Shown here: positions 1-33,005 of the stretch, one piece after another
Numbering within the stretch: the stretch's first letter is position 1
How the letters are laid out: every line of letters begins with the position of its first letter
Assembly: GCF_001194135.2 (NCBI RefSeq)
Contig: NC_068982.1
Span: forward strand, 183,071,588 to 183,135,587
Source: Octopus bimaculoides
Lineage: Eukaryota
Reading direction: 5' to 3'
DNA: 64,000 nt
Notes under the pieces: generated by a model
Databases searched by the model: none
What the model saw: only the letters and a program-made list of their open reading frames with translations
What the model was told of the DNA's origin: nothing
Made by a program: the position numbers and the translations under genes

Positions 1-135
1 GGAGCAGGAAGAGGAGGAAGAGGAGCAGGAGCAGGAGCAGGAAGAGGAGGGAGAGGAGCAGGAGGAGCAGGAGGAGCAGGGGAAGGAGGTGCAGGAGGAG
101 CAGGAGGAGCAAGAAGAGGAGGGGAAGGAGGAGGA
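1..135. repeat. (GGAGCA/GGA)n purine-rich simple repeat
   Basis: Directly visible. Confidence 0.9.
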
Positions 136-149
136 GATTTGCTAGCTTC

Positions 150-298
150 GAGCCAATCGACTGCAGTGCGCAACTGGAACTTATTTTATCGACTCCGAAA
201 GGATGAAAGGCAAAGCGGACCTCGGCGGAATTTGAACTCAGAACGTAAAGACGGACGAAATGCCGTGAAGCATTTCGTCCGGCATGCTAACGATTCTG
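150..298 (-). mobile_element. SINE family A copy
   Basis: Shares core gaaaggatgaaaggcaaag..gacctcggcggaatttgaactcagaacgt with many other copies. Confidence 0.8.
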
Positions 299-863
299 AT
301 CTTGACTGATTGGAAGTGTTAACATGTACATTCTCTGATGCAATACTAGGCAGTGGCTTTCACGGATTCTGATCTTAACTGATTGGAAGTGTTATCAAGC
401 ACATGTGTTTGCCACAGCAAATATTCTGCTCCGTACCGCAGATTTGCACGTCAGTTTCTTGACCTTAATCAGCTGAGCATGTCCCTCAGTGGCTGACGAT
501 ATGTGCATCTCTGATCACGAGCAGAGTAAGTAGTGGAGGAGCATGATAGCCATTTGTTGAGAGGGGTTCTTTGGGGTTTGAATAATTCACCGATGCAAAT
601 ATGGATGTTTCGTTCATCATCCTTAATCCTTATTCAGGGACTTTTTGAGTGAGATGGGCTGTTTGACCCGAAGAAAATTTTAACTGGGTTCCACATGCAA
701 GATCATGCACAGTTTATTTTAATGTGGGTCACCACGTCACGCACATATGATCGTGATGCTTGTGCCTGGTGTACTCTTATCAGATGGGTAGTCATGATGG
801 GTATATTCGGCTTCGTATATTTGTACCCCAGCATCACTGATAACATGCGCTACTCTCTCACTC

Positions 864-899
<36 letters not shown>

Positions 900-900
900 G
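298..900 (+). repeat. Interspersed repeat ending in a (TAA)n tail (probable retroposon 3' part)
   Basis: Internal direct repeat gattctgatctt(g/a)actgattggaagtgtta (x2); ends ctctctcactc(aat)n at 863-898. Confidence 0.45.
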
Positions 901-1028
901 GATTATCAGGAGGGTTTTAAGCACTTGAAAGATATCTGAAAACTTGTGAATACCTACGGTAGCAATCCGCTACCCACATAAATGCTACCTGAAATAAGAC
1001 CGAACCTGAGCCAAACCAAAATGATAGT

Positions 1029-1097
<69 letters not shown>

Positions 1098-1711
1098 CAA
1101 CGACAACACTAATAGTCTCCCGTGAAATTCGATGGAAAAGGTTAGGACGCTAGAATATAATATAACATATCTGGTTTCTTTAAAATTACAAAGGAAACGA
1201 ATGACGTAATTGTTTCTTGCCACCGACCAACGTCTCAGCCGTCGGATGATGAAGAACATCGACCAAGTTGACAAACCGCATAGGCAATGAAGAAGGGCGA
1301 GACTGCTCAATCCTCCAAACGAGCCAAGGTGGAAAAACTCCAATCTACAAGAACTCATCTCTATGTGGGCAGTTTACGAGGGGGGAAAAAATCTACTCTG
1401 AAATTTGATACTGTCATGTGATCAAATCACATGCCACACATAGCATGTCGGACAGAGCTAAACAGGAACAAATGTATAAAAGGAGGTTTTCATTAGTTCG
1501 TTCCTTGGTAGTATTTTAAGAGTAAAACATGTGGTTGGTGTGTGAGTTTCTGAAGGAGTAAAAAAAATTGAATACATTGGCCTGATTGAGAGGGAATAGA
1601 AAAACTCGTCCCAAGCCAGAAGTTGATACGCCACTAATTAAGACGCAATTAGATGTATACATAAAGATGCAGTCTCTTTTCTAATATGTGTGTGGAAATT
1701 CACTGCGAAGG

Positions 1712-1795
1712 TCAGATCCCGATATCTTACAGAGGATTTTAGGGTTTGTTCTAGGATCAGATCCCGATATCTTACAGAGGATTCTAGGGTTTGTT
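1712..1795. repeat. 45-bp-period tandem duplication
   Basis: tcagatcccgatatcttacagaggatt(t/c)tagggtttgtt x2. Confidence 0.85.
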
Positions 1796-2944
1796 AAACA
1801 CTACGCTTCTGTTGATTATCCATTTTCTTACTTCTGGCAATTATCATAGCGTATACGTGCCCGAGATAGGATATTTACCTTATTCTGGAAGTAGGGTCAG
1901 ATTCTGAATTCTTTTTATCGTATAGCCAGAAGGTAAAAGACAGTGCCTACGTCATTTGCGGGGCTTCCCAGATTGAAAAAGGTGACGAGGAGGAAACAAC
2001 CATACAATCATTGCTATCGTAGGACGGGATACTGAGTTAACTCCCGCCAGACAGGAAAGCTGGTACCAATATTTTGTAAAAGGATGAACTCTACTGAAGA
2101 TTTCCAAACATCAAGTGGTCATGTTAAATAGGGAAATATCTAAAGTATGTTATAAATTTAAAATTATTGTTGATGTTAGTAAATTTAAATCCGAGTTCCA
2201 AAAGAACGAATAACAAAAATATTTCAAATGTAGTGGACGGAGAAGACGAAAGACATTTCAGCTAAGAGTTAACAGCGTATGCGGCCAAATACTATTTCTT
2301 CGATATTTAACGCGTATATTGCATTTTGCGGGAGAAAGCATGTGATCAAACATATGTAATATTTATGAAAAGTAACCGATGACACATTCGATAGATTTCA
2401 ACAATAAAACCACGATACTATCTTTAATATGCCGGTAATCTTTCAATAGTGTTCTAGAGATCTTCTAACAACATTTTAATGAACTGTTTTCAAGGAACTT
2501 GTATCAACTAACGGACCATCTATGCTTGAACATGAACACAGGATACTAGAATCTTCATACGACAATGGTATCTTCATACGATAACGGAATCTTCATATAT
2601 AAATTTTTGTCGCGTTTAAACTGTCCGGTATCACCTTTTGACCAATATTCTCTAAAGAACTTCTAGAAGAGAGACTCTAAAAATTGTCCAGGTTTATTGC
2701 TTGATAGTACTACTGAGAGACAGAATGCTGTCGCTTCGAAAGAAATTCTACAGATACGACAATACATCCAGCCGGGTGTATTAAAAAGAAAAGCAATATA
2801 CCCAAATATGGTTCAAAATAATTACATTCTCGAGAAATTTCTACTTACACAATTCAAAGAATAAATTGCTTTAGTCTATTTTTTAAAATTCATTTCACCA
2901 CATCCTGTGTTGTTTTCTTTTCGATTGTTAGTCCTGCAAAAGGA

Positions 2945-3140
2945 GGTGAGAAGGGCGTCAGACAAAATGCTTGACAACGTTTCTTCCAACTCATTGTTTT
3001 GAGCTCAAATTCCGCCGAAGTTGACTTTGCCGTTCATCCTTTCGTGGTCGATAAAATAAAAACCATCAAGTATTGGGAACGAAGTATTCAACATTCCCAC
3101 TCCTCTCAAAATTGCTGGCCTTGTACCTGAATTAAAAGAA
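2945..3140 (+). mobile_element. SINE family A copy (diverged)
   Basis: ctcaaattccgccgaagttgactttgccgttcatcctttcg core. Confidence 0.7.
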
Positions 3141-3795
3141 CTTTTACTTTTGTAACGTTTCTTTCAAACTTGTGACCAATATATTGATTGGAATCTAAAA
3201 AAAACCCTTCTGTTTCAAACTGTAAAGGATCCCTTCAGTTGGTCGGTAATATCAACATTTGGATAATAAATTTAATCAAACCAGAAGGACCTGTAATTAG
3301 TTTAGCGTTGTCTATATTGTTAGATTCAATCACTTTTATCCTCTTGTTAAACTTAAATCAGTACAGGAAGTAGAAAGAAAATGTACAACGAAGTTTTATT
3401 AATATTATAAATATCCTGCAGAATATGAGCTGTTTAATATTTTCCTCTCGGGTTCAGAATTCCAAAGTGAGTTTTTAACTCCAACTATTAGTTTATGATT
3501 CTACCTAATACACGCTTCATTGAGAGCCACCTGGTCGCAAAATTGTCCAAGACTTTCAGAGGAATTTCATTTTCATTGAGCTACATACAACTGCTGGTTG
3601 ATGAAGCTAGATGAATAACGCTAAAAATAACTGAATTTCTTGGAAGATTATCCGTTGGAACATGAGATATTATCAACTGCAATGAATAGTAAACACAACT
3701 AATTAGAATTAACGGTGGAATTTCTATCTTCAACGTTTCGTACACACCCTTATTGGCTCTAATCATAACTCTGACATTATCTGTAGGAATAGAAT

Positions 3796-4016
3796 GGCAG
3801 CGAGCTGGCAGAAACGTTAGCGTGCCGGGCGAAATGCTTAGCGGTATTTCGCCCGTCGCTACATTCTGAGTTCAAATTCCGCCAGGGTCGATTTTGCTTT
3901 TCATCCTTTCGGAGATCGATAAATTAAGTACCAGTGAAACACTGGGGTCGATGTAATCGACTAGTCCCCCACCCGCCAAAATATTTCAGGCCTTGTGGCT
4001 ATAGTAGAAAGGATTA
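3796..4016 (+). mobile_element. SINE family A full copy
   Basis: ggcagcgagctggcagaaacgttagc...gagttcaaattccgcc (B-box-like)...ggccttgtggctatagtagaaaggatta. Confidence 0.85.
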
Positions 4017-6239
4017 TCCGCAGCAATAACAATTTTATCAGGTCTCAAGTTCATATATTCTTTATTCAAAATATTTACAATACGTTAGCAACCACTAGTT
4101 TCTAGAATAACTAAGCTAAAAAGAGAAGTACGAATAACTATTTTTTCTATGCTTCTTGCTGTAATAAATTATTGCAATTCCTAAAACTGGTTTCTCCTTT
4201 TCCTTTTTCGTGTTACTGAAATATCATCGGTTCCATCTAGCAACAAGTTGAATTTCCATTTTCTTTATCACTAATTAGATCTTCTTCAAAACATTCCCAG
4301 TCAACATTTTGAAGAGAAAATCTAATTGGCAATATTGGTGCAGTTTTATTTTTGACATCATTTGAGTATCTTTGTTAACATTTTTAAAAATATCTACTAA
4401 ATGATCACAGGTTTTGACTAATGAATAGCTATGAATATTTAATGCAACACTGCCTTCAGTCTTTGCACAATCATCATTTATTCATTCTGTGTCGTCGTTG
4501 TTGTAGTTCATTTTAGTGTTGTTGTTATTCATTGCTGACGTTATTCGTGGGTTTTGTTGATTTTGCACGTTATTATTCTCATTAGTGGGGTTTTTTGTTT
4601 GTTTGTTTTTTTGCAATTAAGAATTATTTTTGTGTTATTCGTTTTGTGCTGTTATTGTTGCTGTGACAAGGAATAATTTTTGTTAACAATCAAAAAAATT
4701 AGTTTTGTCTCGTTGCTTCAAATGAACAGCAACAACACAAACAGTTTTCAATCGCAAAAAACTATCCCTTTGACAAAAAAAAGAAAAACGTCGACGACGA
4801 CGGCGCAGTACCTGATCAACTGGAACAATGCTTTTTGATTACACTACAGAAACAACATTACTTGGGGGCCATCTACAGCTTTGTAAAGTTCATCTAGCAC
4901 GTTAAAGAAAAGGAGAAATTGACACATATTAATTTGTACATCCAACTTAAACTAGGTGTTTTGTTTTGAACGTTGTAAGTTGTGGTAATAGTCCTGAGAA
5001 ATTATCTCGTATAGACATCGAATGCTAAAAAAAGGCATAGATTATATCGGTGGATGAAATTTCGTCGACACCGGCAGATGGGACTGTTATATCGCGTGAT
5101 TTCAGTGTAAGTTGTACCTTGTCAGCAACAGACACCCTACAATCGAATACTGGATCGAAAATCCGTCGAACCGATGCAGTTTAATACTACCTAAACAATC
5201 TGTGCTTTAATGGCATCTAACGTATATACGAGATTACCGCAGTATACGGCGTTCAAAGCATTTCAGTTTCCGTCTACCAAATCCACTCACAAGGTTTTGG
5301 TCGGCCCGAGGCTATAGTAGAAGACACTTGCCCAAGGTGCCACGCAGTGGGACTGAACCCGGAACCATGTGGTTGGTAAGCAAGCTACTTACCACACAGC
5401 CACTCCTACGTTACGTGAACATTCTTTAATCAGAACAATTCAAGTCAACTTGCAAGTCGGCACCTGGAGAAATATGTCCATTCTGGACATTATTTATTGC
5501 TCGACCAGTGATTGGTGTTTGGCTCGGTCTAGACCTTCTAGAAGAAAGACCTTTGACAAACAAAGTTACAAGCAGTGTGGCTAATCTTGCCTAGAAATGA
5601 GGGGGAAAGTTGAAAAACAACAGAAGGACTCACTCCCTAGACTCAGTCTGGTTAACGTACATTTTACAGGTTGCACTTTATAAGATTAGACAGTCTGATT
5701 CTCTCTACAGAAACTGATCTCATTTGTCATAAGGTCTGACTGTTGCCAACACTCTTTACATATAATATATTCTTATTGTTCATATTATCGTCTCTGATAC
5801 TTCTTGTGAAACTACTACTGCAGCAAAGAGAATGGCGCCAATTCCATATAATTATTTTATCAGATGCTGTCATTCTACGAGCGAGCGTTTTAGAAACGTT
5901 AGAATTGTTTGTGTGTTAGAAATACTCTGACGTTGGAATACTATATTGGCAGCAAAGTCGACGCAATATTAAAGAGATGTTCGCTGTAAGAGCGTTTCCA
6001 TTTCTCTTCAAATGTGTTTTGTGTTTTTGGTTTTAAAAAAGCCATTATTTTTCCAATCCAAGCTTTGGTCAGACCAGGATGACATAACAAGGATAGTGAT
6101 AACATAACGGTGAATATATTTTCCTAAATATTATTTGTATCTGTAAAATGACTAACCATACATATGCAGAGAAAGAGAGGTAGTGGGAGGTAGAGGGAGA
6201 AATGGAAGTAGATAGAAGTTAGCATCTCGATTTACTTCT

Positions 6240-8723: not shown

Positions 8724-9781
8724 ATTCTACATAAAATATAAATTTATTTATGCCATTGGTCTCTTTATCTCATTATTCTTCATATATATATANNNNNNNN
8801 NNNNNNNNNNNNNNNNNNNNNNNNNNNNNNNNNNNNNNNNNNNNNNNNNNNNNNNNNNNNNNNNNNNNNNNNNNNNNNNNNNNNNNNNNNNNNNNNNNNN
8901 NNNNNNNNNNNNNNNNNNNNNNNNNNNNNNNNNNNNNNNNNNNNNNNNNNNNNNNNNNNNNNNNNNNNNNNNNNNNNNNNNNNNNNNNNNNNNNNNNNNN
9001 NNNNNNNNNNNNNNNNNNNNNNNNNNNNNNNNNNNNNNNNNNNNNNNNNNNNNNNNNNNNNNNNNNNNNNNNNNNNNNNNNNNNNNNNNNNNNNNNNNNN
9101 NNNNNNNNNNNNNNNNNNNNNNNNNNNNNNNNNNNNNNNNNNNNNNNNNNNNNNNNNNNNNNNNNNNNNNNNNNNNNNNNNNNNNNNNNNNNNNNNNNNN
9201 NNNNNNNNNNNNNNNNNNNNNNNNNNNNNNNNNNNNNNNNNNNNNNNNNNNNNNNNNNNNNNNNNNNNNNNNNNNNNNNNNNNNNNNNNNNNNNNNNNNN
9301 NNNNNNNNNNNNNNNNNNNNNNNNNNNNNNNNNNNNNNNNNNNNNNNNNNNNNNNNNNNNNNNNNNNNNNNNNNNNNNNNNNNNNNNNNNNNNNNNNNNN
9401 NNNNNNNNNNNNNNNNNNNNNNNNNNNNNNNNNNNNNNNNNNNNNNNNNNNNNNNNNNNNNNNNNNNNNNNNNNNNNNNNNNNNNNNNNNNNNNNNNNNN
9501 NNNNNNNNNNNNNNNNNNNNNNNNNNNNNNNNNNNNNNNNNNNNNNNNNNNNNNNNNNNNNNNNNNNNNNNNNNNNNNNNNNNNNNNNNNNNNNNNNNNN
9601 NNNNNNNNNNNNNNNNNNNNNNNNNNNNNNNNNNNNNNNNNNNNNNNNNNNNNNNNNNNNNNNNNNNNNNNNNNNNNNNNNNNNNNNNNNNNNNNNNNNN
9701 NNNNNNNNNNNNNNNNNNNNNNNNNNNNNNNNNNNNNNNNNNNNNNNNNNNNNNNNATATATATATATATATATATAGTAA

Positions 9782-10076: not shown

Positions 10077-10239
10077 ATGAGTTCGGACTCAACGAAATGC
10101 GCACACACATCATACACGAGAAAGATCGATTATTCGATTAACAGTGACAGAAACAGAAAATCTGTTTATAATAATGTGTGTAACAAACGTGAAGACGGGT
10201 TGGAGAGTGATTATCAGATCTACAAGTTCCTTTTGGTAG
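10077..10239 (+). CDS. Rab27-like GTPase, first coding exon (N-terminal extension plus beta1)
   Basis: ATG at 10077 follows an in-frame TAG. Reads MSSDSTKCAHTSYTRKIDYSINSDRNRKSVYNNVCNKREDGLESDYQIYKFLLV-G. The end matches the Rab27 start DYDYLIKFLALG. Ends at G|GTAAGT (phase 1). Absent from the ORF track. Confidence 0.75.
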
Positions 10240-10837: not shown

Positions 10838-11270
10838 ATGTCTTTCGCTGGCAGAAGAAGCCAGGCAATGCAAGTCCAAAAGAAACTCATGTTGATCCCT
10901 TTTTTTCAACAGCAAAGGCATCACTTACAGCCACTGGTCTCCTCCTTGCAAGACGGTTCACAAAGAGTGTTTTGTGGAGGTTTGGGGAGAGTTCAAGAAG
11001 AAATTTCGGGTCGGTGGCACCTTTCCTGGACAATGCACCAATTCCTTTCTTGCAATTCCTTTCTGGTAACAAACTACTTGACGGAGATGGGCATCAAAAC
11101 TGTCCCTCACCCTCTCTACAACCCAGACCTTGCTCCCTGTGACTTTTTATTGCTCCTCAAGCTGAAGGAGAACTTCAGGAGCAGTCGTTTTGAAGACATC
11201 AAGATGAAGGAGGATTTCCATAGCGCCATTACGAAGAGGCTTGAGCGCTACTTTGTACTTCTTTGACATG
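10838..11270 (+). mobile_element. Mariner transposase C-terminal remnant
   Basis: Frameshifted DNAP, then LVTNYLTEMGIKTVPHPLYNPDLAPCDF, matching the mariner HPPYSPDLAPxDF motif. Confidence 0.85.
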
Positions 11271-13500
11271 TTTCTCCTGAAAGGGTTTCTAAATTTCTGG
11301 AATGATCTTCGTCTTAAAAGGGTAAAGACACCCTTTGAACATGAATGACCATGGGATTGCACCTAGAAAGTTACCCTCCGAGGCATAAGTCCGAGCAAGG
11401 TTGTTGCCCATGCATATCAGCCTCCTTTCTCCACGCCCCCGATGTCATCCAAAGGAAAGGCAAAGGCCGATACAGCTTGGCACCAGTGACGTCATAACTC
11501 ATTTCTACAGCTGAGTGAACTGGAGCAACGTGAAATAAAGTGTTTTGTTCGAAAACATACGCACAATCCGGTCCGGGAATCGAACTCACTACCACTTGAT
11601 TGTGAGCTCGACGCTCTAAGCACTGAACCATATACTATCAAATTCTATGAAGATGGCCATAATTTAGTAGGAAAGTAATTGTCTCTACCTGATTTCCTGT
11701 TAATCTTTCTGTTGTGTCGACGCCTCCAGGCGAAGAAGTAGGATATCCCAAGACATATAAATAGAGGTAGTCTGACCGTGGTAGGAGTGTTGAGTAGCAG
11801 TCGAGTAGCAGTTGTGTAGCGGTTGAGTAGAGATCATCCGAAGGTGCTAGATAGCAGTAACTTGAGACATAATACTTTCTAACACTTTTCTCTTTATATT
11901 CAGTATCACTGAGTAGTTAACAGCCATGGTTTGCTCACGTTAGGAATTTAATGAAAATATTTGCTAGTTCAAATTTCAAAAGTGGCAAGGTCATCTTCAG
12001 TCTACTATCCGCCATTTTACTCTCGTTCCATAATAATCTTATTCTGTAACAAACCAATAATTTTCATTTTCATAGGGTTGTAGAAACAAAGAAGCTCTAA
12101 AATTTCTTATTTTCAACGATGTTAGCTTAATATATTGACTAAGTGCTTGTTAGCGAAGATGTTGAATGGAATGATCTTGAGACAGTTTGGTTACGAAGCG
12201 ACATTCTCAAGCAAACCCGCAAGCACACAGTTATGCCTATGCGAAACGATATCTATTACAAATAAACTACACCAAACCAGTGGTTTTCAACCTTTCGTCT
12301 CTCGACTGCATCTTTTATGGAATGGTGTTTCACAAACGCTCCTTCATAGGGTTTCGGGGTAGGATTTTAGATTAGGATTTTCGGGTTTACAGCTAGAGTC
12401 GGAAATTTAGAATGAGCATCAAACGATGAAAGCAAATAATAGAAAACGAATGAATTTGTCAATTTATTTTTTCTTTTAACATACAGATATAATATATAAT
12501 GTTTAAAACATAAAAATCCTGAAAAAAAAACATTTGCAAATGAATTAAAAAACAAAAAGGTACGAAAGAAAGGATGTTCATGGCACAACTCAGATATGTA
12601 TTGTGTATTATTGTAAATTTCATATATATATATATATATACTACAGTATTATAGTCATATAACATGAATGAAAAAAATATGCTTTTGCCACTGTGATTAA
12701 GATCAAGAAATGTCGCAGAGGTACAACAATTATAATTTTACTGTTTACACATTTCATGTTGCTTATACAATTTCATTAAGTTAATCAAATTTTGTAAATA
12801 ATTAGATTTATCAACTTAAAACAAGATTTTATAAAAGCTATTTCTCATCTATATATTTGCAATAAACATGTTGTCAGTAAAAATGATATCATTAAATTAG
12901 TATTCTAGTCATGATGTGTGAAGAAAACAATTTACAAAAGATTACAAAATTTTCCCAAGAGTTATATTTTCATTTTATGAGTTAATTAATTATTCAAACT
13001 ATTGCTTTTCTTATACAGTTTCCTTCATTTTGTTTTATGAAGCAATTGCTTGGAAAACTCTACGCTTACGCGCACTCGGGATAAGGTCCACGTGTTGAAA
13101 AGAGAAACCATCTGTTTAAGGGTGTCGCATGTCAGTTATTTAGAAGTTTGATTTTGTTCCCAAATACATATTACAGCCGCTTTGAAATGCATCGCCAATG
13201 ATGTTCTTGAGATTTTAGCTAGTTTCAGGTCGTTCAACATTGGACCCCGCAACTCTGACAGGTTGATCCCATCGGAGTTCAGCTAGTCCCAGCTTCCTTG
13301 CGGCAATAAGCCATGAGTCAATCCTCTTTATGCAAAGTCATCTAAGAAGCTTTCTCCGCAGCTTAAACCGTTTTACTGATTCTGTTTGTTATTCATTGCT
13401 AAAGGAAAAAGTATAAACCAGTTATCTGGCTTATCTGTGAAGTTTTTCTTGGGCAGTGTTTTTGATAAACTTTATAAATCCAATATACTAACAATATTTA

Positions 13501-13737
13501 GGTGACCGGTAATAAAGCCACAGGAAAAAAAGTCATAGTAATAAAGTTACAATTTTGACTAGGAAAAAAAGTCGCAATTTATGGTGGCCGGTAATAGAGT
13601 CACGGGGGAAAAGTCACAATTTATGGGATCTGGACAAAACTCCCCAAGGACAAAACCCCCACGGACAACCCCCCACTCCAACCCCGGACGAAACACTTGT
13701 GACTTTTTTCCTGTGACTTTTTTTTTTACCTGGATTC
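13501..13737. mobile_element. MITE with ggaaaaaaagtcac sub-repeats (MULE-like)
   Basis: Left gccacaggaaaaaaagtca is the reverse complement of right tgacttttttcctgtgac. Internal ggacaa-a/c-cccc units. Confidence 0.6.
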
Positions 13738-14676
13738 AATATTTATGCCGTCCACTCATTCAGTTGTATGATATTTGCAACTCTTAGTCTCCCTCACTCT
13801 TATCTCTTACCCCTTATCTTTCTTTCTGCTGCCTGTTCCTACTACTTTATCTTCTTCAGCAATCACAAATGATTGTTGTTTCACAGAGTAGAAGTTTAAT
13901 TTCTGATGACATAGTATTTTACTGGTACTGACAAAGAATANNNNNNNNNNNNNNNNNNNNNNNNNNNNNNNNNNNNNNNNNNNNNNNNNNNNNNNNNNNN
14001 NNNNNNNNNNNNNNNNNNNNNNNNNNNNNNNNNNNNNNNNNNNNNNNNNNNNNNNNNNNNNNNNNNNNNNNNNNNNNNNNNNNNNNNNNNNNNNNNNNNN
14101 NNNNNNNNNNNNNNNNNNNNNNNNNNNNNNNNNNNNNNNNNNNNNNNNNNNNNNNNNNNNNNNNNNNNNNNNNNNNNNNNNNNNNNNNNNNNNNNNNNNN
14201 NNNNNNNNNNNNNNNNNNNNNNNNNNNNNNNNNNNNNNNNNNNNNNNNNNNNNNNNNNNNNNNNNNNNNNNNNNNNNNNNNNNNNNNNNNNNNNNNNNNN
14301 NNNNNNNNNNNNNNNNNNNNNNNNNNNNNNNNNNNNNNNNNNNNNNNNNNNNNNNNNNNNNNNNNNNNNNNNNNNNNNNNNNNNNNNNNNNNNNNNNNNN
14401 NNNNNNNNNNNNNNNNNNNNNNNNNNNNNNNNNNNNNNNNNNNNNNNNNNNNNNNNNNNNNNNNNNNNNNNNNNNNNNNNNNNNNNNNNNNNNNNNNNNN
14501 NNNNNNNNNNNNNNNNNNNNNNNNNNNNNNNNNNNNAGAAGCAGTAGGGAAGGAGAGGAAACAGTTTTGTATTCCTTTAACATTTTTAAGGATTGTTTCA
14601 ATGAAAAGTAACTTTCCGAATACAAACACATTCTCTCTCTTTCTCTTTGTCTCTCTCTCACTCTTTCTTTCTTTCT

Positions 14677-14724
<48 letters not shown>

Positions 14725-14899
14725 CTCTGCGCAGACAAACCCATTTCCAAATGAATTAAAAAACAAAAAGGTACGATAGAAAGGATGTCCATGGCACAAC
14801 TCAGATATATATTGTATTATATATTATATATATTGTACATTATTATAAATTTCATATATACATTATATATAAATTTCATATATATTAAGTATAAATTGT

Positions 14900-15420: not shown

Positions 15421-15815
15421 TGCCGGAGCCTCGTGGAGCTTTAGGTGTTTTCGCTCAATAAACACTCACAACGCCCGGTCTGGGAATCGAAACCGCGATC
15501 CTATGACCGCGAGTCCGCTGCCATAACCACTGGGCCATTGCTCCTCCACTAATGCAAGTATCATAGAAAACTGAAAGGTATCCTCAAGCCAGAGCCAGGT
15601 CTCTGGTTTGAAAGTATCATCCTCCTTCCAAACGGCTCATCTCCGAGGCCCTATAACGAGTCATGAGCCCTGCCTTGCCTTCTGACTAAAAGATTTAGAA
15701 AAACATCATCATCATTACCATCATCGTCATCGTTTTCGTCGTCGTCGTCATCATTATCGACAGCAACAACGTGTATTCTGATGTCATCAAAAGAAATCTG
15801 TTCTCTGTTTTGCAG

Positions 15816-15910
15816 TCCTACAAATATTCTTACTCAAATGCCCAAGGTTCAGTGGCGGTTGCCTACCACAAAGTCTGTGTCCAGCTGTGGGATACAGCTG
15901 GTATGGAAAG
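15816..15910 (+). CDS. Rab27-like GTPase exon (beta2-beta3 insertion, G3 box)
   Basis: tttgcag| SYKYSYSNAQGSVAVAYHKVCVQLWDTAGME-R |gtaggt, phase 0 to 2. There are 24 residues before W, more than the ~16 after DF in ordinary Rabs, matching the Rab27-specific insertion. Confidence 0.9.
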
Positions 15911-15989
15911 GTAGGTAGGTAATGGCCGAAATACAGACTTTCTTCTCTGATCAGCAACATAACCAATGGCTCTCTCAGTTGAGTAACCT

Positions 15990-16335
15990 TCTCCACTTGG
16001 ATACTTGGTTATGGTGTTGTTGTTGTTGTTCTCGTTATTGTCTTTGGTGTTTTTATTGTCGTTGTTGTTATAAGAATCGTTGTTGTTATTTTCGTACTTT
16101 TGTTGTTACCGTTCTTACTGGTTTTGTTGTTTTTGTTGTCATTGCTTCTTTGTTGTTGTTGCCGTTGTTATTGTTGTTATTGCTGTTATGCTTGTTAATG
16201 TTCCTCCTGGTGTTGTTATCGTCGCCGTTATTGTTGATGTTAATGGTGTTTGTCAATATTATTGTTGTTGTTGTTGCTGCTGTTGTTGATGTTACAGTTG
16301 TCATTTTTACTGGTATAGCTGTTATTGTTGATGCT
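15990..16335. repeat. Degenerate (TTG)n low-complexity tract
   Basis: Directly visible, in the Rab intron. Confidence 0.85.
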
Positions 16336-17088
16336 AAGACCCATTTCAGCTTTGATCGAACAAACCTACGATCAACTGTATCTCAACCGTGGCCACCCGG
16401 TTCTTTTATTTTCAAACATAATATCTTTAAGAGTTCATTGTCAAATATGTCCTTCCTTTTTGAAATATGTGGCATATGATTTGATGTAGAACTAGGTGCA
16501 ATTTCTAGGAGGACTACCGGCCACATAGAGACTCTTTTTATGGCCGGGTGTTGTCCACGATCATTAATAGAGGCTACACATTGTTCGTATTTTACTAAAA
16601 AAAATATTAACAAATAATACTTACAGCCAGTTATAGATAGATATAACTATAATGATAATGAAATTTAATTATTTAATATTATAATCTGACAATATTAATG
16701 ATGTAAAGTGACAAGTATGCGCTTGAGGTAACGGCTACATTAACACATGCTCTGTAACTTTGCAGTGATCTCTGTAGAAAGCTACACATTAGCCTAGCGA
16801 ATTTAATCATTATTAGCGACGCAGAATTTTGCAGAAGGGCCCAAAAGCTATAATGAATACCTTCAAAATCCAGGATAACAAAATTCAGGAAAGTTCTAAC
16901 GAGAGAGAAATCAATGGTGGGGACATCAAAAGATGTGTGATGAGGAAGATCATCACATTCTCTTTCAATCGATATATGCACAAGTTGTGTTTATATTTAT
17001 ACACACTGCATGTCTTAGTCAATATATATATATATATAAAGAGAGAGAGCGGGGGAGAGATATAGATAGATCGATAGATCGATCGATC

Positions 17089-17662: not shown

Positions 17663-18856
17663 GTGTGTGTGTAATCATAATTTTCATCATCAACATAGCC
17701 GTCATCGTCGTCGTCATTCAACGTCCTTTTATCCACACTGGCATGGGTTGGACGATTTGACAAGAACAGAGGAGCCACAGAGCTCCGATAGATTTTATGA
17801 CTGTTTGGCATGGTTCTACTGCTAGATGCCCTTCCTAACGCCAACCACTTAACAGTGTTGCGGGTGCTTTTTAGTGGGTGTTTTTTACGTGGCACCATCG
17901 ACAGTTAGGTCGCCAAGTACCCGCAAGATAAGACAGTGCTCATATTTAATCAATATATTCACACCATATCTCTCAATCGACATGTATTGACTGTATTTAT
18001 GTACTGTAGGAATATCGATCTATTCTATATCAATCCAGTTCAGCTTTTACCGACTGTATGTACTAAGAAGTAGGTTGGTATGTAGGGATATATATAGATA
18101 TATACATACATATATATATATATATATANNNNNNNNNNNNNNNNNNNNNNNNNNNNNNNNNNNNNNNNNNNNNNNNNNNNNNNNNNNNNNNNNNNNNNNN
18201 NNNNNNNNNNNNNNNNNNNNNNNNNNNNNNNNNNNNNNNNNNNNNNNNNNNNNNNNNNNNNNNNNNNNNNNNNNNNNNNNNNNNNNNNNNNNNNNNNNNN
18301 NNNNNNNNNNNNNNNNNNNNNNNNNNNNNNNNNNNNNNNNNNNNNNNNNNNNNNNNNNNNNNNNNNNNNNNNNNNNNNNNNNNNNNNNNNNNNNNNNNNN
18401 NNNNNNNNNNNNNNNNNNNNNNNNNNNNNNNNNNNNNNNNNNNNNNNNNNNNNNNNNNNNNNNNNNNNNNNNNNNNNNNATATATATATATATATATATA
18501 CATATATATACGACGGGCTTCTTTCAGTTTCCGTCTACCAAATCCACTCACAAGGCTTTGGTCGGCCCGAGGCTATAGTAGAAGACACTTGCCCAAGATG
18601 CCACGCAGTGGGACTGAACCCGGGACCATGTGGTTGGTAAGCAAGCTACTTACCACACAGCCACTCCTATATATATATACAGCATGGATAATACTGATTA
18701 TATTACATCTATCAGTTAATATATGCTCAGCTTAGAGTGCTTAACCGTCACTCGTTAGCGCATATGACTTTGTACCTTGTAATTACATGAATATGTATGC
18801 ATATTAATTTATAAAGCTATTCCCCGCCTAATTGTATGACCTTCTCTTTCAATCAG

Positions 18857-19084
18857 GTTCCATTCCTTGACAACATCCTACTTCAGAGATGCAAAAGGAT
18901 TTTTCTTGATGATTGATCTGACCAATGAAAATACTTTCGTAAACGCTTTCGCTTGGTTACAAAAAATGGAAGAATACGGTCCCAGATCTGGCTACGATGT
19001 AATCATTGTTGGCAATAAAATAGATCTTGTAGACTGTCGCAAAATCAGTGCAGAGACTTTACATAAATTTGCTGAAAATCATAG
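18857..19084 (+). CDS. Rab27-like GTPase exon (switch II, G4)
   Basis: ctctttcaatcag| (R)FHSLTTSYFRDAKGFFLMIDLTNENTFVNAFAWLQKMEEYGPRSGYDVIIVGNKIDLVDCRKISAETLHKFAENH |gtttgt, phase 2 to 2. Aligns with Rab27 [23 protein letters not shown]...GNKSD. Confidence 0.93.
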
Positions 19085-20459: not shown

Positions 20460-20950
20460 TGATAACGTGATCACGTGAGATCTGATTGGGCCTGGGAAGA
20501 ATACATGAAGGATGCTCACGAGACTATCACTGTCAAATACCTGNNNNNNNNNNNNNNNNNNNNNNNNNNNNNNNNNNNNNNNNNNNNNNNNNNNNNNNNN
20601 NNNNNNNNNNNNNNNNNNNNNNNNNNNNNNNNNNNNNNNNNNNNNNNNNNNNNNNNNNNNNNNNNNNNNNNNNAGGATATCCGGGTTTTGTAGGACGTTC
20701 AATCTGCAAAGCTCTAACTGTACTTGGAGTTACTGGTGTAGCAAAGGGGGAAAAAGTGGCGAGGCATGCATTATGGAAGCCGTAGAGAAGGCCATTAGAT
20801 GGCTTTGGAGAAAGAGGGCCGACCAATGGATTATCGCTGCTGGGATCAAATCTTCGCTCAGCTAACTGAGAGGGTCTCATATTGAATAACTCGAAAGCCC
20901 CTGGGACCCTACGAACAGCACTGAGGTTGCATCCGAGAACATTCGTGAGA
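20460..20950 (+). mobile_element. HERO-like REL-endonuclease non-LTR retrotransposon 3' remnant
   Basis: WEEYMKDAHE...KY [gap] GFVGRSICKALTVLGVTG...EAVEKAIRWLWRKRADQW. Fits WE..MEEAHERK..KY...GCRGF.G.SL...EAAEKASRWLW.KR. Confidence 0.75.
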
Positions 20951-21224: not shown

Positions 21225-21411
21225 ACTACCATATGTTGAAACCAGTGCCAAAACTGGGATCAACATCGAAGAATCTATCGATATGATGTTACACTTAGCA
21301 ATATTCCGTCATAGATTATCATTCCAAAAGAAAGTAATCAATGAAGAGCCGGTTCCTACAAAACTGTGTAATAGCACTACTACTCGACGAATTAAATGCA
21401 GCTGTATTTAG
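21225..21411 (+). CDS. Rab27-like GTPase terminal exon (G5, prenylation motif)
   Basis: ttttctgtccacag| (R)LPYVETSAKTGINIEESIDMMLHLAIFRHRLSFQKKVINEEPVPTKLCNSTTTRRIKCSCI*. The last three exons total 510 nt and stay in frame. Confidence 0.93.
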
Positions 21412-23912
21412 ATCAAGTGCTGTAGTTAAGTGAAGCTGGTAACAGAACTTGTCAGCATATGTCTTGAGTTTCTCGACATATTCCAGCAATGGTTACAGGT
21501 AATATAGTCACATTTTCGATGTTGTTGTTATTAAGAAAATTTTCAAGCTCCAAACTAAATAATTCTAAAGTAATTTACCAGTGGCAAAGGTTTTCAGCAT
21601 CCTATCTTAACTAACAGGCATATTAAGCTTTTGCCTGCCCATATTATTTTGGTAATTTTGTCTCAAACGTCCGTGCTTGTTTTCAGACGTTTTGTTAGCT
21701 CTTGTTTCATACGCTCTGAGCAATATAAAGCTTCTCATAAGTCTCAAGTTACTCTGTTAGTTGAAAAACATTTGGAATGCGTGTCATATATGATGCATGG
21801 GTGCCAGAGAAATATGTCTTGTGTATTACATGTAATACAGATGGCAGGCAAAGGGTTCAGCAAAAGAAATTTTGTATTCTTTCACACATTCATAGAAGGG
21901 TAGCTTCATTATCCAACCCCACCCGCTTCTATACTCCTTCATGCCTCTGGTATTTAATTCCATCCTCACACTTTCTAAATTCAAGTACCTCCAATGTAGT
22001 TTCTGTTTCCCATCCATTTATGATTAACGAAATAAATAACAGAAATATTCTGGAGGAGTGGAATGTCAATTCACCAAATTCTTCTCCTGTTTGTTTGTGA
22101 TCTTATGTCGTATCACCATTACTATTTTGATTTTTGTCAATTAACTAAAGCATTGTGTTAAACGATTTGGTTTTATCTCTCTAAATTTTCAGCCCAAATC
22201 CTACCCAATAATAACTATATTCAGAAGACTCTTCTTATTCACAATAATACTCCTAATTGAACGAATACTGACTCATAGGATTTTAGATCGAATCTAGTGT
22301 AAGTGCTTCTAACTAATACAAAGCAGTTTAATTAACTTTAGGATGAAGATATACGGATTTTATGGAGAAGTTAACTGAGATTATTATAATCCAGACGATA
22401 AGGAAAATTTTCTCTCAGACACTTAAACTAATTTGATGATCCCCACGGGAGAAGTATTTTGGGATGGTTTTCAGTTGTTGTTGTTGTTGTTGTTGTTTTA
22501 TATCTCCCTGTCAGCTCTGATCGAGGACATATTATGGAAGGATTTTCAACCATTAACTCCTAAAACATTATCTAGTTTGTCCTTCCATTTTTTTTAAAGA
22601 AGGATGATTGTAATCTGAGTAAGATTTCGCTATGGTTTCTACTACTTTACCCACCATATAAACACTTCCAGACTTCCTCGTTTCTTATTACTTTTTTGCA
22701 TGGCTGGGGGGCAGGGAGAATGTAAGGATCTGCAAAGAATCTGACCAAAATAGAGTGGATTGGTGCAATGGAAAGTATTTTGGAATTAGAATGTTACCTT
22801 GGTTATTTCTGAAAATCCTCATCATCACCCCTCACTGCTCTTAGAAGTTCAGCTAACATTATTCAGTGTCTTTTTGTGCTTCTTTCGAGGTGAAGGGTAA
22901 GGTGTTTAAATTATATTCAGTTAATTTATTCCAACTCAAACTTGTGTTTAATGAATTTTAATTTTATATAACAGTACTGATCTTCCACATATCGTAACAT
23001 ATCGAATCGCTGACCTTTTAACCTTATATGGCAACACTGACCTCCAACATTATAGTGCATTGTTGATCTTTTGAGATTATATCGCATCACCCACCTTTCT
23101 CATAATATTTTATCGCTGGCCTTTTATATTATATTTCTAGTGTTCTCGGTTCTCCCAGGCTACGACAACAGTACCGCTTCACAATCACCAACTATTTCAT
23201 CATTCTGGTCATCATCGTTGCTATACCTTATCCTGAGGAGAACTGTGATTAGATACAGCTCCTCAGAATTCAACCTACCTCCGAAGGAACTGGACATCAA
23301 GGGTACAGAACGGGTAACACACATCAATAAAATATACGCAATTATTAGTTCTCCCTCTTGTTTTTCTTCATAAAAACTGTCATTGGCGCTATTTTTTTTT
23401 ATCGTTATGGGTGTCATTTCTATTTACTAAACATTTTTACGATTCACTATTATTATGTTAGCATATATATTTAAATATAATATACATCCATATCTTTGGT
23501 ATTTTAGCCTACTTTCGATGGGGTGAGGTTTTCAGATTATATTCAGATAATTTATTCCAACTCGTGTTTAATGAAGTTTGATTTTTTAATAATATACTGC
23601 AATACATTTTGTATGCTTGTCCACACTAAAATATAATGTTCAGTCACACAATATGTACGTTACGTTATACCTAAATATAACATATGGCTGCACATTAAGT
23701 ACGTTAGCTCACACTTAAATTATAATATGCGGTCATACATCAGTCTATGCGGTAAATACATTTAGAACCAAAATTAGTTGATCTTTAAGAGGCAAATCAC
23801 TCTGATTCGTTACATTAATCTTGTTTGCGCTACAGGTAGATCAAAATGGTACAACCTAACACCGCTGCCGCTGCATAAATTTGTATACTCGTATGTTTGC
23901 CATGTGTATGTG

Positions 23913-23950
<38 letters not shown>

Positions 23951-23960
23951 NNNNNNNNNN

Positions 23961-28190: not shown

Positions 28191-28774
28191 TAGGTCCTAT
28201 TATAATAATGATACCAGAAAGTGTGATCTCTGTCTTTTACAGAAAGACAACAATCTATTATAGATTTTGAAATTTGTAACAAAAGATTAAAATCCGTGAA
28301 TTCTTGCAAAGATGCTTCCTTTGATATTCATTGGGGAATTGACAACAACAAACTAGCTAAAATAATTTACTCCCTACATAATGGATTTTCCATATCCTGA
28401 AAGATAGATCATAAAAATATTCATGAACAATATAAATTTATTAACAACAGCCATCACGCTAGCTCATGCGAATTTTATGCATATGACACTGAAGGTATGG
28501 GATATCATATGACGCGACGAAACTATGTGTTCTTGAAATGAAAATTGAATAGATGAATGTGTGACACATTTTGAAATGTTCTTCCTCAGCAACTAATCAA
28601 ATATGTATGTACTGTTGCCAATTCATATTTCAATGCTTCTAATAAAAATACAATGGAAGTGATTCCTTCTCCTTTTCTTCTGGTTTGCTCCTACTCCTAC
28701 AGTTTTTATTTGAAATTACTGAGCACTGTTACTTATACTAATAAGAGATCAAATTTATTTATATATATAGACGC

Positions 28775-29170
28775 AGATGTGACCGTGAGGCAACTAGCTT
28801 GCTTACCAACCACATGGTTCCAGTTTCAGTCCCACTGCGTGGTACCTTGAGCAAGTGTCTTCTACCATAGCCTTGGGCCAACCAAAGCAATGTAAGCGGA
28901 TTTGGTAGACAGAAACTGAAAGAAGCCTGTTGTATATATATATACATATATATATATATATGCGTATATGTTTGTGTGTCTGTGTGTTTGTGTCCCCCAC
29001 CACCATCACTTGACAACCGATGTTGGTGTGTTTACGTCCCTGTAACTTAGCGGTTCAGCAAAAGAGACCGATAGGCTTACAAAGAATAAGTCCTGGGGGT
29101 TGATTTATTCGACTAAAGGCGGTGCTCCAGCATGGCCGCAGTCAAATGACTGAAACAAATAAAAGAATAA
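28775..29170 (+). mobile_element. SINE family B full copy
   Basis: Same head, core, internal (TA)/(TG) tract and tail. Confidence 0.85.
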
Positions 29171-29174
29171 AAGA

Positions 29175-29212
<38 letters not shown>

Positions 29213-32714: not shown

Positions 32715-33005
32715 CTATACTTGGTCTTTCACGGAAGCAATCTTAGTTTTTCTCGTTGGGGATGCCAAGCGTGATCGAACCCACTCCAATGCATGCATCA
32801 GTCGTTTGATATGCCGAGTGTCATGTACTACCCGCTGGACATCATTATCTGTCATGGACAACAAGCGTTCCATTGAAGAGAATCCCATCTTGATGAGATG
32901 TTCACCATACATTGGCAGACCAATGGAGATCAAAAAATCTCTCAATGAGGATATTTTCAGGTCACATGATGATAGGCAGGCTTTGGCCAATGATTCACTG
33001 GTCAT
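32715..33005 (-). CDS. SASH1: SASH1-like terminal exon, SAM2
   Basis: tttttttattacag| MTSESLAKAC...ISSLRDFLISIGLPMYGEHLIKMGFSSMERLLSM...RHIKRLMHALEW...KDQV*. Compare SASH1 SSVSDWLISIGLPMY. The ten exons total 2964 nt, or 988 codons. Confidence 0.93.
   Translation of the reverse strand: MTSESLAKACLSSCDLKISSLRDFLISIGLPMYGEHLIKMGFSSMERLLSMTDNDVQRVVHDTRHIKRLMHALEWVRSRLASPTRKTKIASVKDQV

What the first reader, a model, noticed from the sequence alone, without database searches (positions are those of the whole stretch)
15885..15910. Rab27-like GTPase has Met in place of the catalytic switch-II Gln (WDTAGMER)
Seen: TGG GAT ACA GCT GGT ATG GAA AG|G. Established: this position is Ras Q61 / Rab27A Q78, Q78L is the standard GTPase-deficient mutant, and Rab25 has a natural Leu here. 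Inference: a naturally slow-hydrolysing, GTP-biased Rab27 paralogue. TBC GAPs supply a Gln in trans, so GAP-stimulated turnover may persist. The protein is also diverged (FHSLTTSYFRDAK, AWLQKM) and has a ~40-aa N-terminal extension, suggesting a lineage-specific duplicate.
Basis: partly seen in the sequence, partly recalled or inferred. Interest (0 to 1): 0.7.

Follow-up and report, generated by a model that had tools for sequence, protein, structure and literature searches.

The report
Octopus Rab27-like GTPase lacking catalytic glutamine
Octopuses carry, beside their normal Rab27 gene, a tandem pair of conserved Rab27-derived genes in which the glutamine that normally helps split GTP is replaced by methionine and the usual partner-binding pocket is rebuilt; they probably act as long-lived 'on' switches with new partners, but this has not been tested in the laboratory.

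Summary
Window 15888-15911 (+) reads TGG GAT ACA GCT GGT ATG GAA AG|G = WDTAGMER. It closes exon 3 of a five-exon Rab gene of Octopus bimaculoides. Exon 2 (P-loop and switch I) is hidden in the assembly gap 13941-14536.

The Met is not an error. The same ATG is in O. sinensis DNA, and the same motif is in the Argonauta hians orthologue. A second paralogue, 15.9 kb upstream on the same strand, also has it.

The GTPase core is under strong purifying selection (dN/dS 0.03). Sequence, predicted fold, two Rab27-type loop insertions and all four intron positions point to Rab27 descent. A canonical Rab27 (WDTAGQER, CGC tail) exists on another chromosome of the same species.

The Met genes are not functional Rab27 copies. 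Of 87 positions nearly invariant in 25 canonical Rab27 proteins, 43 have changed. These include the effector 'WF/SF4' pocket (Y122P, C123R/Q/V, M93K/N/R, M185H/R).

Most likely they are nucleotide-binding, slow-hydrolysing, GTP-biased Rabs with new effectors. This is inferred from Ras Q61M and Rab Q-to-L precedents, not measured. No Met-clade member was found outside octopods. The age of the duplication is unresolved. Moderately interesting: a new member of the known class of Gln-less small GTPases.

The parts
10077..10239 (+). Exon 1 of the Met-type Rab27-like gene (M1). It holds the start ATG, a poorly conserved N-terminal extension of about 45 aa, and the start of strand beta1 (YKFLLVG). 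It ends in phase 1 at the donor G|gtaagt.
   Evidence: tblastn with the O. sinensis orthologue P0001, 85% identity over residues 1-55. Junction read. The extension is predicted disordered (pLDDT below 50) and evolves quickly (dN/dS 0.58).
13941..14536 (.). Run of N (assembly gap) that hides exon 2. Exon 2 is 107 nt in O. sinensis and encodes the P-loop GDASVGKSS and switch I PTIGIDF.
   Evidence: Synteny with O. sinensis locus L001. L001 15254-15688 aligns to window 13473-13940, and L001 17513-17706 aligns to window 14537-14728. Exon 2 lies at L001 17390-17496, inside the unaligned stretch. No P-loop motif occurs anywhere on the + strand of the window upstream of exon 3.
15816..15910 (+). Exon 3: the Rab27-type beta2-beta3 loop insertion, strand beta3, and the G3/switch II start WDTAGME(R).
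   Evidence: 100% amino-acid identity to O. sinensis.
15903..15905 (+). ATG codon: Met in place of the catalytic switch II Gln (Ras Q61 / Rab27A Q78).
   Evidence: DNA. (aligned to residue 78 of Rab27A Q78L crystal constructs). (Gln in 25 of 25 canonical Rab27, Met in 5 of 5 Met-clade sequences). (same codon in O. sinensis DNA).
18857..19084 (+). Exon 4: the rest of switch II (FHSLTTSYFRDAKGF), DLTNENTFVNAFAWLQKM, the rebuilt alpha3-beta5 loop (YGPRSGYD in place of HAYCENPD), and the G4 motif GNKIDL.
21225..21411 (+). Exon 5: the G5 motif ETSAK, helix alpha5, the hypervariable tail and the C-terminus KCSCI. Stop codon TAG at 21409-21411.

Best explanation
The window carries one member (M1) of a tandem pair of octopod genes that descend from Rab27 by DNA-level duplication and have since become a separate, conserved Rab lineage.

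The protein keeps everything needed to bind guanine nucleotide and Mg2+: the P-loop GDASVGK[ST], the switch I Thr, DTAG, NKxD and ETSA. It also keeps two C-terminal cysteines for geranylgeranylation. It has Met where all canonical Rab27 proteins have the switch II Gln that positions the attacking water.

The most likely consequence is an intrinsic GTPase that is crippled. Once loaded with GTP, the protein would stay membrane-bound and 'on' much longer than a normal Rab. It would be switched off only by a TBC-type GAP that supplies Arg and Gln in trans, or by turnover of the protein.

The Rab27-specific effector pocket is also rebuilt, and a disordered N-terminal extension has been added. The protein therefore probably signals to partners other than the classical Slp/Slac2/Munc13-4 set.

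Shown here: gene structure, conservation, purifying selection, Rab27 descent, loss of the Gln and loss of the pocket residues. Inferred: slow hydrolysis, GTP bias, GAP behaviour, prenylation, new effectors and the cellular role.
For: Reality and conservation.
- WDTAGMER is present in the window, in O. sinensis DNA, in Argonauta hians P0003 and in the paralogue M2 of O. bimaculoides and O. sinensis.
- dN/dS between O. bimaculoides and O. sinensis is 0.03 in the GTPase core, with 8 synonymous changes and 1 non-synonymous change.

Rab27 descent.
- PDB phmmer gives Rab27A/B 166-174 bits, and the next best hits about 120 bits.
- A profile of the Met clade hits only octopod proteins above 460 bits, and then only Rab27A/B of all animals at about 200 bits.
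- The exhaustive HMMER search gives the same picture.
- The AlphaFold model (pLDDT 83.5) has Rab27A/B as its top 21 Foldseek hits.
- The long beta2-beta3 insertion and the one-residue-longer alpha3-beta5 loop are retained.
- All four core intron positions coincide in M1, M2 and the canonical O. vulgaris Rab27 gene.

Nucleotide-binding motifs are intact in the full-length orthologues.

Precedent for the effect of the substitution.
- HRAS Q61M is transforming in the Der et al. 1986 series, as summarised in PMC6813200.
- Rab27A Q78L is the construct used to hold Rab27A in the GTP form (PMC8864489).
- TBC GAPs supply Arg and Gln in trans, and the Rab's own Gln does not take part in catalysis (PMC5902221).

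Effector pocket. Y122, C123, M93 and M185 are invariant or nearly so in 25 canonical Rab27 proteins, and all are replaced in all five Met-clade sequences. PMC8864489 states that Y122 mutation strongly inhibits effector binding and that C123 and C188 are unique to Rab27.
Against: - No biochemical measurement exists. Rab27A already hydrolyses GTP slowly on its own, and if a TBC GAP works normally on the Met protein the physiological cycle could be nearly unchanged.
- In the Gyp1-Rab33 complex the Rab's own Gln contacts the GAP backbone (PMC5902221), so Met could instead weaken GAP action. The direction of the net effect is therefore uncertain.
- No expression data were examined, so tissue and abundance are unknown.
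- In this window the P-loop exon itself cannot be read because it lies in a gap. Its sequence is taken from the orthologues.
- The tail KCSCI is not one of the usual Rab prenylation endings.
Confidence: 0.6

Rival explanations
1. The substitution is functionally almost silent. Rab inactivation in vivo depends on TBC GAPs that bring their own Gln, so the Met protein cycles much like any Rab. The Met is a tolerated, drifted residue in a paralogue whose real novelty is its changed effector surface.
For: The TBC dual-finger mechanism, with the Rab's own Gln displaced from catalysis (PMC5902221). Many other Rab27-invariant residues have also changed: 43 of 87.
Against: Gln78 is invariant in 25 of 25 canonical Rab27 proteins from cnidarians to vertebrates, which argues that it matters even in GAP-dependent Rabs. 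The Met itself is then frozen in both paralogues and in three genera, under a core dN/dS of 0.03. This points to selection on the new residue rather than drift.
Confidence: 0.25
2. The gene belongs to an old, separate Rab subfamily that is sister to all Rab27 and was lost everywhere except in octopods. It is not an octopod- or cephalopod-specific duplicate of Rab27.
For: In the NJ tree, canonical Rab27 proteins form a group that excludes the Met clade in 100% of bootstraps. The Met clade shares none of the substitutions specific to cephalopod or octopod canonical Rab27; for example it keeps Arg184 where cephalopods have Ser.
Against: No member was found in any other animal, either in an exhaustive HMMER search of 1.84 billion representatives or in a profile search. 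The cuttlefish Acanthosepion pharaonis has a canonical RAB27A in the protein collection, yet no Met-clade protein from it or from any other decapodiform came up. The branches are very long and the outgroup attaches next to the other long Rab27 branches (insects), which is the signature of long-branch attraction. This reading also requires many independent losses.
Confidence: 0.15
3. The Met is an artefact (sequencing or assembly error), or the locus is a decaying pseudogene.
For: The window assembly is poor around the gene, with four N gaps inside it. One exon is missing, and the UniProt model for this locus is truncated.
Against: The codon is identical in an independent assembly of another species. 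The motif is the same in a third genus and in a second paralogue. The reading frame is intact and all splice sites are canonical. The core dN/dS is 0.03.
Confidence: 0.01

Closest known systems
Rab27A / Rab27B (canonical Rab27 subfamily; in octopus XP_014781289 = P0406)
   Same: - Best sequence and fold match.
- The long beta2-beta3 loop insertion and the extra residue in the alpha3-beta5 loop are retained.
- The FRDAxGF...DLTNE block is retained.
- The hydrophobic triad is kept (F46, W73, and F88 replaced by Tyr).
- Intron positions are identical.
   Different: - Q78 is replaced by Met.
- The WF/SF4 effector pocket is dismantled: Y122P, C123R/Q/V, M93K/N/R, M185H/R, C188S/V.
- The N-terminal DYDYL motif is lost.
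- A disordered N-terminal extension of about 45 aa is added.
- The tail is KCSCI, CTPCS or CNCCTN instead of CXC.
- 43 of 87 Rab27-invariant positions have changed.
Rab25 (natural Leu at the switch II Gln position) and other naturally Gln-less small GTPases such as Rnd/RhoE, RhoH and Rap (from my own knowledge of these families, not tested here)
   Same: These are paralogues of a canonical GTPase in which the catalytic Gln is naturally replaced while the nucleotide-binding motifs stay intact. They are expected to be GTP-biased and regulated in some way other than intrinsic hydrolysis.
   Different: - The parent subfamily is different: Rab27, not Rab11 or Rho.
- The residue is Met rather than Leu, Ser or Thr.
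- The distribution is restricted to octopods.
- No biochemistry is available.
Laboratory mutants HRAS Q61M and Rab27A Q78L
   Same: They carry the same position and the same or a similar hydrophobic residue. HRAS Q61M transforms cells (Der 1986, via PMC6813200). Rab27A Q78L is used to hold Rab27A in the GTP form (PMC8864489).
   Different: Those are single engineered changes in an otherwise wild-type protein. Here the change is natural, ancient, and accompanied by many other substitutions.
Tritrichomonas small GTPases P0008 and P0010-P0012, and the unnamed protist-like P0147, which also read WDTAGMER
   Same: They have the identical G3 motif with Met.
   Different: They are only 30-39% identical. 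They lack the Rab27 loop insertion and have different tails. This is independent (convergent) use of Met at this position, not shared ancestry.

Membership tests
Rab family of Ras-superfamily small GTPases | The five nucleotide-binding motifs G1-G5: GxxxxGK[ST], switch I Thr, DxxG, NKxD and ETSA. | tested here: met
   Read in the window: G3 DTAG (15891-15902), G4 GNKIDL (exon 4) and G5 ETSAK (exon 5). G1 GDASVGKSS and the switch I motif PTIGIDF are read in the orthologues P0001 and P0003, because in the window they lie in the gap 13941-14536. Pfam Ras PF00071 scores 146 bits, E = 1e-42.
Rab family of Ras-superfamily small GTPases | C-terminal cysteine motif for double geranylgeranylation. | tested here: inconclusive
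   Two cysteines lie within the last five or six residues in every member: KCSCI, KCTPCS, CNCCTN. None is a standard CC, CXC or CCXX ending. Prenylation cannot be tested with these tools.
Rab27 subfamily | Closest sequence and structural similarity is to Rab27A/B rather than to any other Rab. | tested here: met
   PDB phmmer gives Rab27A/B 166-174 bits and Rab26, Rab8A and Rab3 about 120 bits. After the octopod Met proteins, every named single-domain protein listed in the profile search is a Rab27A/B. Foldseek hits 1-21 are Rab27A/B.
Rab27 subfamily | Rab27-type insertions: the long beta2-beta3 loop, and one extra residue in the alpha3-beta5 loop. | tested here: met
   29 residues lie between DF and WDTAG, against 26 in Rab27A and 16 in Rab3/Rab8-type sequences. 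Column 123 is occupied in Rab27 and the Met clade and gapped in the Rab1/8/10 representatives.
Rab27 subfamily | Shared gene structure with the canonical Rab27 gene of the same lineage. | tested here: met
   The introns lie at LxG|D, (K/R)x|x, ER|F/Y and the codon before L-x-Y-x-ETSA in M1 (window, L001), M2 (L002) and canonical O. vulgaris Rab27 (L003). It was not tested whether other Rab subfamilies share these positions.
Rab27 subfamily | The WF/SF4 effector-binding pocket: Y122, the Rab27-unique C123 and C188, M93 and M185 (PMC8864489). | tested here: not met
   Y122 becomes Pro, C123 becomes R/Q/V, M93 becomes K/N/R, M185 becomes H/R and C188 becomes S/V in all five Met-clade sequences. 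In 25 canonical Rab27 proteins these are Y122 25/25, C123 24/25, M93 25/25 and M185 25/25.
Rab27 subfamily | Catalytic switch II Gln (Q78) and a C-terminal CXC. | tested here: not met
   Met in 5 of 5 Met-clade sequences against Gln in 25 of 25 canonical ones. The tail is KCSCI rather than CGC or CAC.
Rab27 subfamily | Monophyly with canonical Rab27 in a phylogeny. | tested here: inconclusive
   In the NJ tree the Met clade (100% bootstrap) sits on the branch between canonical Rab27 and the Rab1/8/10 outgroups. The rooting shows signs of long-branch attraction. The synapomorphy count is uninformative.
Naturally hydrolysis-deficient ('atypical', GTP-locked) small GTPases | A non-Gln residue at the Ras-Q61 position with nucleotide-binding motifs intact. 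| tested here: met
Naturally hydrolysis-deficient ('atypical', GTP-locked) small GTPases | Measured low intrinsic GTPase activity and a predominantly GTP-bound state in cells. | not testable with these tools
   This needs recombinant protein and nucleotide-state assays.

The most novel reading that the evidence does not exclude
Octopods evolved a private, tandemly duplicated pair of constitutively GTP-bound Rab27 descendants. These no longer use the Slp/Slac2/Munc13-4 effector pocket. Instead they serve as permanent membrane identity tags for an octopod-specific secretory or lysosome-related organelle, for example in chromatophore, ink, salivary/venom or sucker gland cells. They would act through new effectors and be regulated by expression and protein turnover rather than by a GTPase cycle.
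Probability: 0.15. Interest if true: 0.65.

Novelty: new member of a known kind. Interest (0 to 1): 0.45.

Why it matters
Rab27 controls regulated secretion and lysosome-related organelles such as melanosomes, lytic granules and dense granules. Its switch II Gln is invariant from cnidarians to mammals in the 25 sequences compared here.

A conserved natural Q-to-M version, present twice in octopods beside the normal gene, is a ready-made evolutionary experiment on two questions:
- How much a Rab needs its own catalytic Gln when TBC GAPs bring one in trans.
- How a Rab can be re-wired to new effectors while keeping its fold.

It may also mark a cephalopod-specific trafficking step.

On the practical side, public annotation calls these proteins 'Rab-27A-like' or 'Rab-27B', and in one case 'SOCS box domain-containing protein'. 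These names would mislead orthology-based analyses. The O. bimaculoides model for this locus is truncated, and the O. vulgaris model fuses the two paralogues.

Tried and rejected
This was explained later by the N gap.
- A Biopython NJ run with 200 bootstraps was killed by the sandbox. I replaced it with my own numpy NJ.
- I tried to date the duplication by counting cephalopod-, octopod- and mollusc-specific Rab27 states shared by the Met clade. The result was uninformative: 3 against 6, 4 against 4, and no mollusc-specific sites.
- Literature: 'WDTAGME' gave 0 papers. 'Rab27 + cephalopod' gave nothing relevant. A search for structural papers on Rab27 effector specificity gave no direct residue list. 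The SF4-pocket paper was used instead.
- A search for Rab25 and catalytic glutamine found only a general review.
- The UniProt name 'SOCS box domain-containing protein' for the truncated model is not supported. There is no SOCS-box Pfam hit in P0001, P0002 or P0003.
- I first considered Ser at the Ras-G13 position of the P-loop (GDASVGK) as a second 'activating' change. I set it aside because Rab3 proteins naturally read GNSSVGK (my own knowledge, not tested here).
- Rfam and tRNA scans of the window found nothing.
- The paralogue M2 is not inside the window.

Full report
**1. The observation**

Window 15816-15911 (+) translates to SYKYSYSNAQGSVAVAYHKVCVQLWDTAGMER. The quoted string TGG GAT ACA GCT GGT ATG GAA AG|G sits at 15888-15911, and the Met codon is 15903-15905. 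The exon has a canonical acceptor (ttttgcag|) and donor (AG|gtaggt) and ends at 15910. The Arg codon is completed by the first base of the next exon. The finding's start coordinate, 15885, is the preceding Leu codon, which is a trivial offset.

**2. The gene**

Using the O. sinensis orthologue found (P0001, 258 aa), tblastn and inspection of the junctions give a five-exon gene on the + strand:
- exon 1: 10077-10239
- exon 2: missing from the window
- exon 3: 15816-15910
- exon 4: 18857-19084
- exon 5: 21225-21411, ending KCSCI-stop

No P-loop motif occurs upstream in the window. Synteny with the O. sinensis locus L001 shows that the sequences flanking the N run 13941-14536 align to L001 up to 15688 and from 17513 onward. 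The 107-nt exon 2 (GDASVGKSS...PTIGIDFRNKKL) lies at L001 17390-17496, inside the gap.

The window is Octopus bimaculoides chromosome CM046602.1 (GCA_001194135.2). It starts at about position 183,071,588, because L002 26186-30382 equals window 1-4197 at 100% identity.

The UniProt model for this locus (A0A0L8FSE8 = P0002) starts at an ATG inside intron 3 (15922). It therefore omits the P-loop, switch I and the WDTAGMER motif.

**3. Is the Met real and maintained?**

- The O. sinensis genome, an independent assembly, has the same ATG.
- Argonauta hians, in another octopod family, has WDTAGMER in its orthologue P0003, which is 75% identical.
- A second paralogue, M2, also reads WDTAGMER. It is P0019 in O. 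bimaculoides and P0162 in O. sinensis, and is 45% identical to M1.
- M2 lies on the same strand. Its stop codon is 5.8 kb upstream of window position 1, which puts it about 15.9 kb upstream of the M1 start.
- The O. vulgaris annotation fuses the two genes into one 360-aa model (P0013).
- Between O. bimaculoides and O. sinensis the GTPase core has 8 synonymous changes and 1 non-synonymous change, giving dN/dS 0.03.
- The N-terminal extension (0.58) and the C-terminal tail (0.53) are much less constrained.

This is a functional, selected gene. It is neither an error nor a pseudogene.

**4. What family is it?**

- Pfam sees an ordinary Ras-family domain.
- Against PDB sequences, Rab27A/B score 166-174 bits, and Rab26, Rab8A, Rab3 and Rab1 score about 110-122 bits. 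The alignment places the Met on residue 78 of the Q78L crystal constructs.
- An exhaustive HMMER search of 1.84 billion representatives found only octopod proteins as close relatives, followed by canonical Rab27 proteins. A profile search with the four Met-clade proteins gave the same result, with scores dropping from 464 to about 200 bits.
- An AlphaFold model (pLDDT 83.5) has residues 1-45 disordered. Rab27A/B take the first 21 Foldseek ranks.
- Two Rab27-type length features are retained: the long beta2-beta3 loop and the extra residue in the alpha3-beta5 loop.
- All four core introns sit at the same codon positions in M1, M2 and the canonical O. vulgaris Rab27 gene. I did not test whether other Rab subfamilies share these positions.
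- A canonical Rab27 (WDTAGQER, CGC tail) exists in O. bimaculoides itself on another chromosome (P0406, XP_014781289). It also exists in O. sinensis, O. vulgaris, Argonauta, a squid and a cuttlefish.

**5. How far has it diverged from Rab27?**

I compared 25 canonical Rab27 proteins, from Nematostella to vertebrates. Of the 87 positions that are invariant or nearly so, 43 have changed in at least one Met-clade member. Q78 is Gln in 25 of 25 canonical sequences and Met in 5 of 5 Met-clade sequences.

The residues that PMC8864489 describes as forming or flanking the Rab27 'WF/SF4' effector pocket are all replaced:

| Rab27A residue | Role stated in PMC8864489 | Met clade |
|---|---|---|
| Y122 | Mutation strongly inhibits effector binding | Pro |
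| C123 | Unique to Rab27 among Rabs | R / Q / V |
| C188 | Unique to Rab27 among Rabs | S / V |
| M93 | Lines the pocket | K / N / R |
| M185 | Lines the pocket | H / R |

The N-terminal DYDYL motif is also lost. The general Rab hydrophobic triad is kept (F46, W73, and Tyr at position 88). The protein is therefore Rab27-derived, but it fails two defining functional features of Rab27.

**6. Phylogeny**

NJ with 300 bootstraps gives three firm results:
- M1 plus M2 are monophyletic (100%).
- Octopus and Argonauta M1 group together (100%).
- Canonical Rab27 proteins group to the exclusion of the Met clade (100%).

The Met clade sits on the branch toward the Rab1/8/10 outgroups. The root joins Rab27 next to the long insect branches. 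This is what long-branch attraction would produce, so the age of the duplication is not resolved.

A count of lineage-specific Rab27 states was uninformative.

The M1/M2 split predates the Octopus-Argonauta divergence, because M1 orthologues are 75% identical and M1 and M2 are 45% identical. No M2 was found for Argonauta.

No Met-clade protein was found outside octopods, although decapodiform cephalopods are represented in the protein collection by their canonical Rab27: the squid Doryteuthis pealeii and the cuttlefish Acanthosepion pharaonis.

**7. Mechanism**

Shown:
- The nucleotide- and Mg-binding motifs are intact.
- The catalytic Gln is absent.

From established knowledge:
- The switch II Gln orients the attacking water.
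- In the Der et al. 1986 series of 17 codon-61 substitutions in HRAS, Q61M has intermediate transforming strength, and only Q61P failed to transform, like wild-type HRAS (summarised in PMC6813200).
- Rab27A Q78L is used to hold Rab27A in the GTP conformation (PMC8864489).
- TBC-domain GAPs provide both Arg and Gln in trans. The Rab's own Gln is pushed aside and contacts the GAP backbone (PMC5902221). TBC1D10A/B are the listed Rab27A GAPs.

Inference:
- Intrinsic hydrolysis is crippled, so the protein is GTP-biased.
- A TBC GAP may still act, but with unknown efficiency.
- Because GDI extracts only the GDP form, the protein would dwell on membranes.
- With the WF pocket gone and a new disordered N-terminal extension, its effectors are probably different from those of Rab27.
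- Gln (CAA/CAG) to Met (ATG) needs two base changes. One of the two shortest paths runs through Leu (CTG), the Rab25/Q78L state.

**8. Rivals**

- The Met is nearly neutral because GAPs do the work (confidence 0.25).
- The clade is an ancient Rab27 sister lineage lost elsewhere (0.15).
- Artefact or pseudogene (0.01, effectively refuted).

**9. Novelty and verdict**

Gene models exist in NCBI under the names 'Rab-27A-like' and 'Rab-27B'. The full-text library holds no paper containing the motif and none relevant on Rab27 in cephalopods.

Naturally Gln-less small GTPases are a known kind (Rab25, Rnd, RhoH, from my own knowledge), and Met at this position recurs independently in Tritrichomonas GTPases. 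This is therefore a new member of a known kind.

It carries some extra interest. It is a conserved tandem pair, octopod-restricted as far as can be seen, derived from a secretory Rab whose Gln is otherwise invariant, and it has a rebuilt effector pocket.

Interest 0.45. The biochemical reading is plausible but untested.

Noticed in passing
window 15922-15978 (+), inside intron 3: The UniProt/2015 gene model for this locus (A0A0L8FSE8 = P0002, 156 aa) starts at an ATG in intron 3 (MAEIQTFFSDQQHNQWLSQ) and then joins exon 4. It therefore lacks G1-G3 and the Met motif. Its name, 'SOCS box domain-containing protein', has no support from Pfam.
   Followed up: yes
5.8 kb upstream of window position 1 (L002 10001-20382): A second Met-type Rab27-like gene (M2; P0019 = XP_014787369, labelled 'Rab-27B') lies head-to-tail with the window gene. 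It has the same five-exon structure and the same WDTAGMER motif. No M2 was found for Argonauta.
   Followed up: yes
window 1827-1889 (+) and 23157-23249 (+): The O. vulgaris model CAI9718309 (P0013) fuses M2 and M1. It contains two extra 'exons' that match these window stretches at 76-81% amino-acid identity. The second lies downstream of exon 5 and would replace the G5/ETSAK exon with RLRQQYRFT...PYPEENCD. This is either a spurious prediction or an alternative 3' exon that would give a truncated GTPase.
   Followed up: partly
window 13941-14536, 18129-18479 and 20544-20673 (N runs inside the gene); 8793-9756 upstream of exon 1; also 23951-23960, 42199-42386, 51479-51567, 61067-61188: There are eight assembly gaps in 64 kb. 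Three fall inside the Rab gene and one lies just upstream of it. The gap at 13941-14536 removes the P-loop/switch I exon.
   Followed up: yes
window 32715-33113 (-), 36125-37231 (-), 39140-39487 (-), possibly 55921-56526 (-): A neighbouring gene lies on the minus strand. It has two SAM domains whose best PDB matches are SASH3, SASH1 and SAMSN1 (E = 1e-12 and 3e-7). A 368-aa Ser-rich open exon between them has no Pfam hit. It looks like a SASH1/SLY-family adaptor.
   Followed up: partly
window about 33250-33660, 57485-57890, 49470-49870, 28770-29180; partial copies at 18480-18668, 5261-5411, 61189-61365: An interspersed repeat of about 400 bp (SINE-like) is present in many copies in both orientations, 80-97% identical to copies in the M2 locus and the canonical Rab27 locus. 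One partial copy sits about 190 bp upstream of exon 4, next to a gap.
   Followed up: no
window 15705-15765 and 16010-16290: Trinucleotide microsatellites flank exon 3: (ATC/GTC)n upstream and (GTT)n downstream. The downstream one creates a spurious 185-aa Cys/Val/Leu-rich ORF (15922-16479).
   Followed up: no
window 10838-11266 (+), intron 1: This 142-aa ORF has an ending (...HPLYNPDLAPCDFLLLLKLKENF...) that looks by eye like a mariner/Tc1 transposase remnant. Pfam gave no hit at E <= 0.01.
   Followed up: partly
proteins P0008, P0010-P0012 (Tritrichomonas) and P0147 (unnamed, Logan): Unrelated small GTPases of protists also read WDTAGMER. Met at the catalytic Gln position has therefore arisen more than once.
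   Followed up: partly
orthologues P0001, P0003, P0019 and P0162 (exon 2, hidden in the window gap): Both Met paralogues share the P-loop GDASVGK[ST], with Ser at the Ras-G13-equivalent position where canonical Rab27 has GDSGVGKT (G19 in 24 of 25). Rab3 proteins naturally have Ser there (my own knowledge), so I did not treat this as a second activating change.
   Followed up: partly
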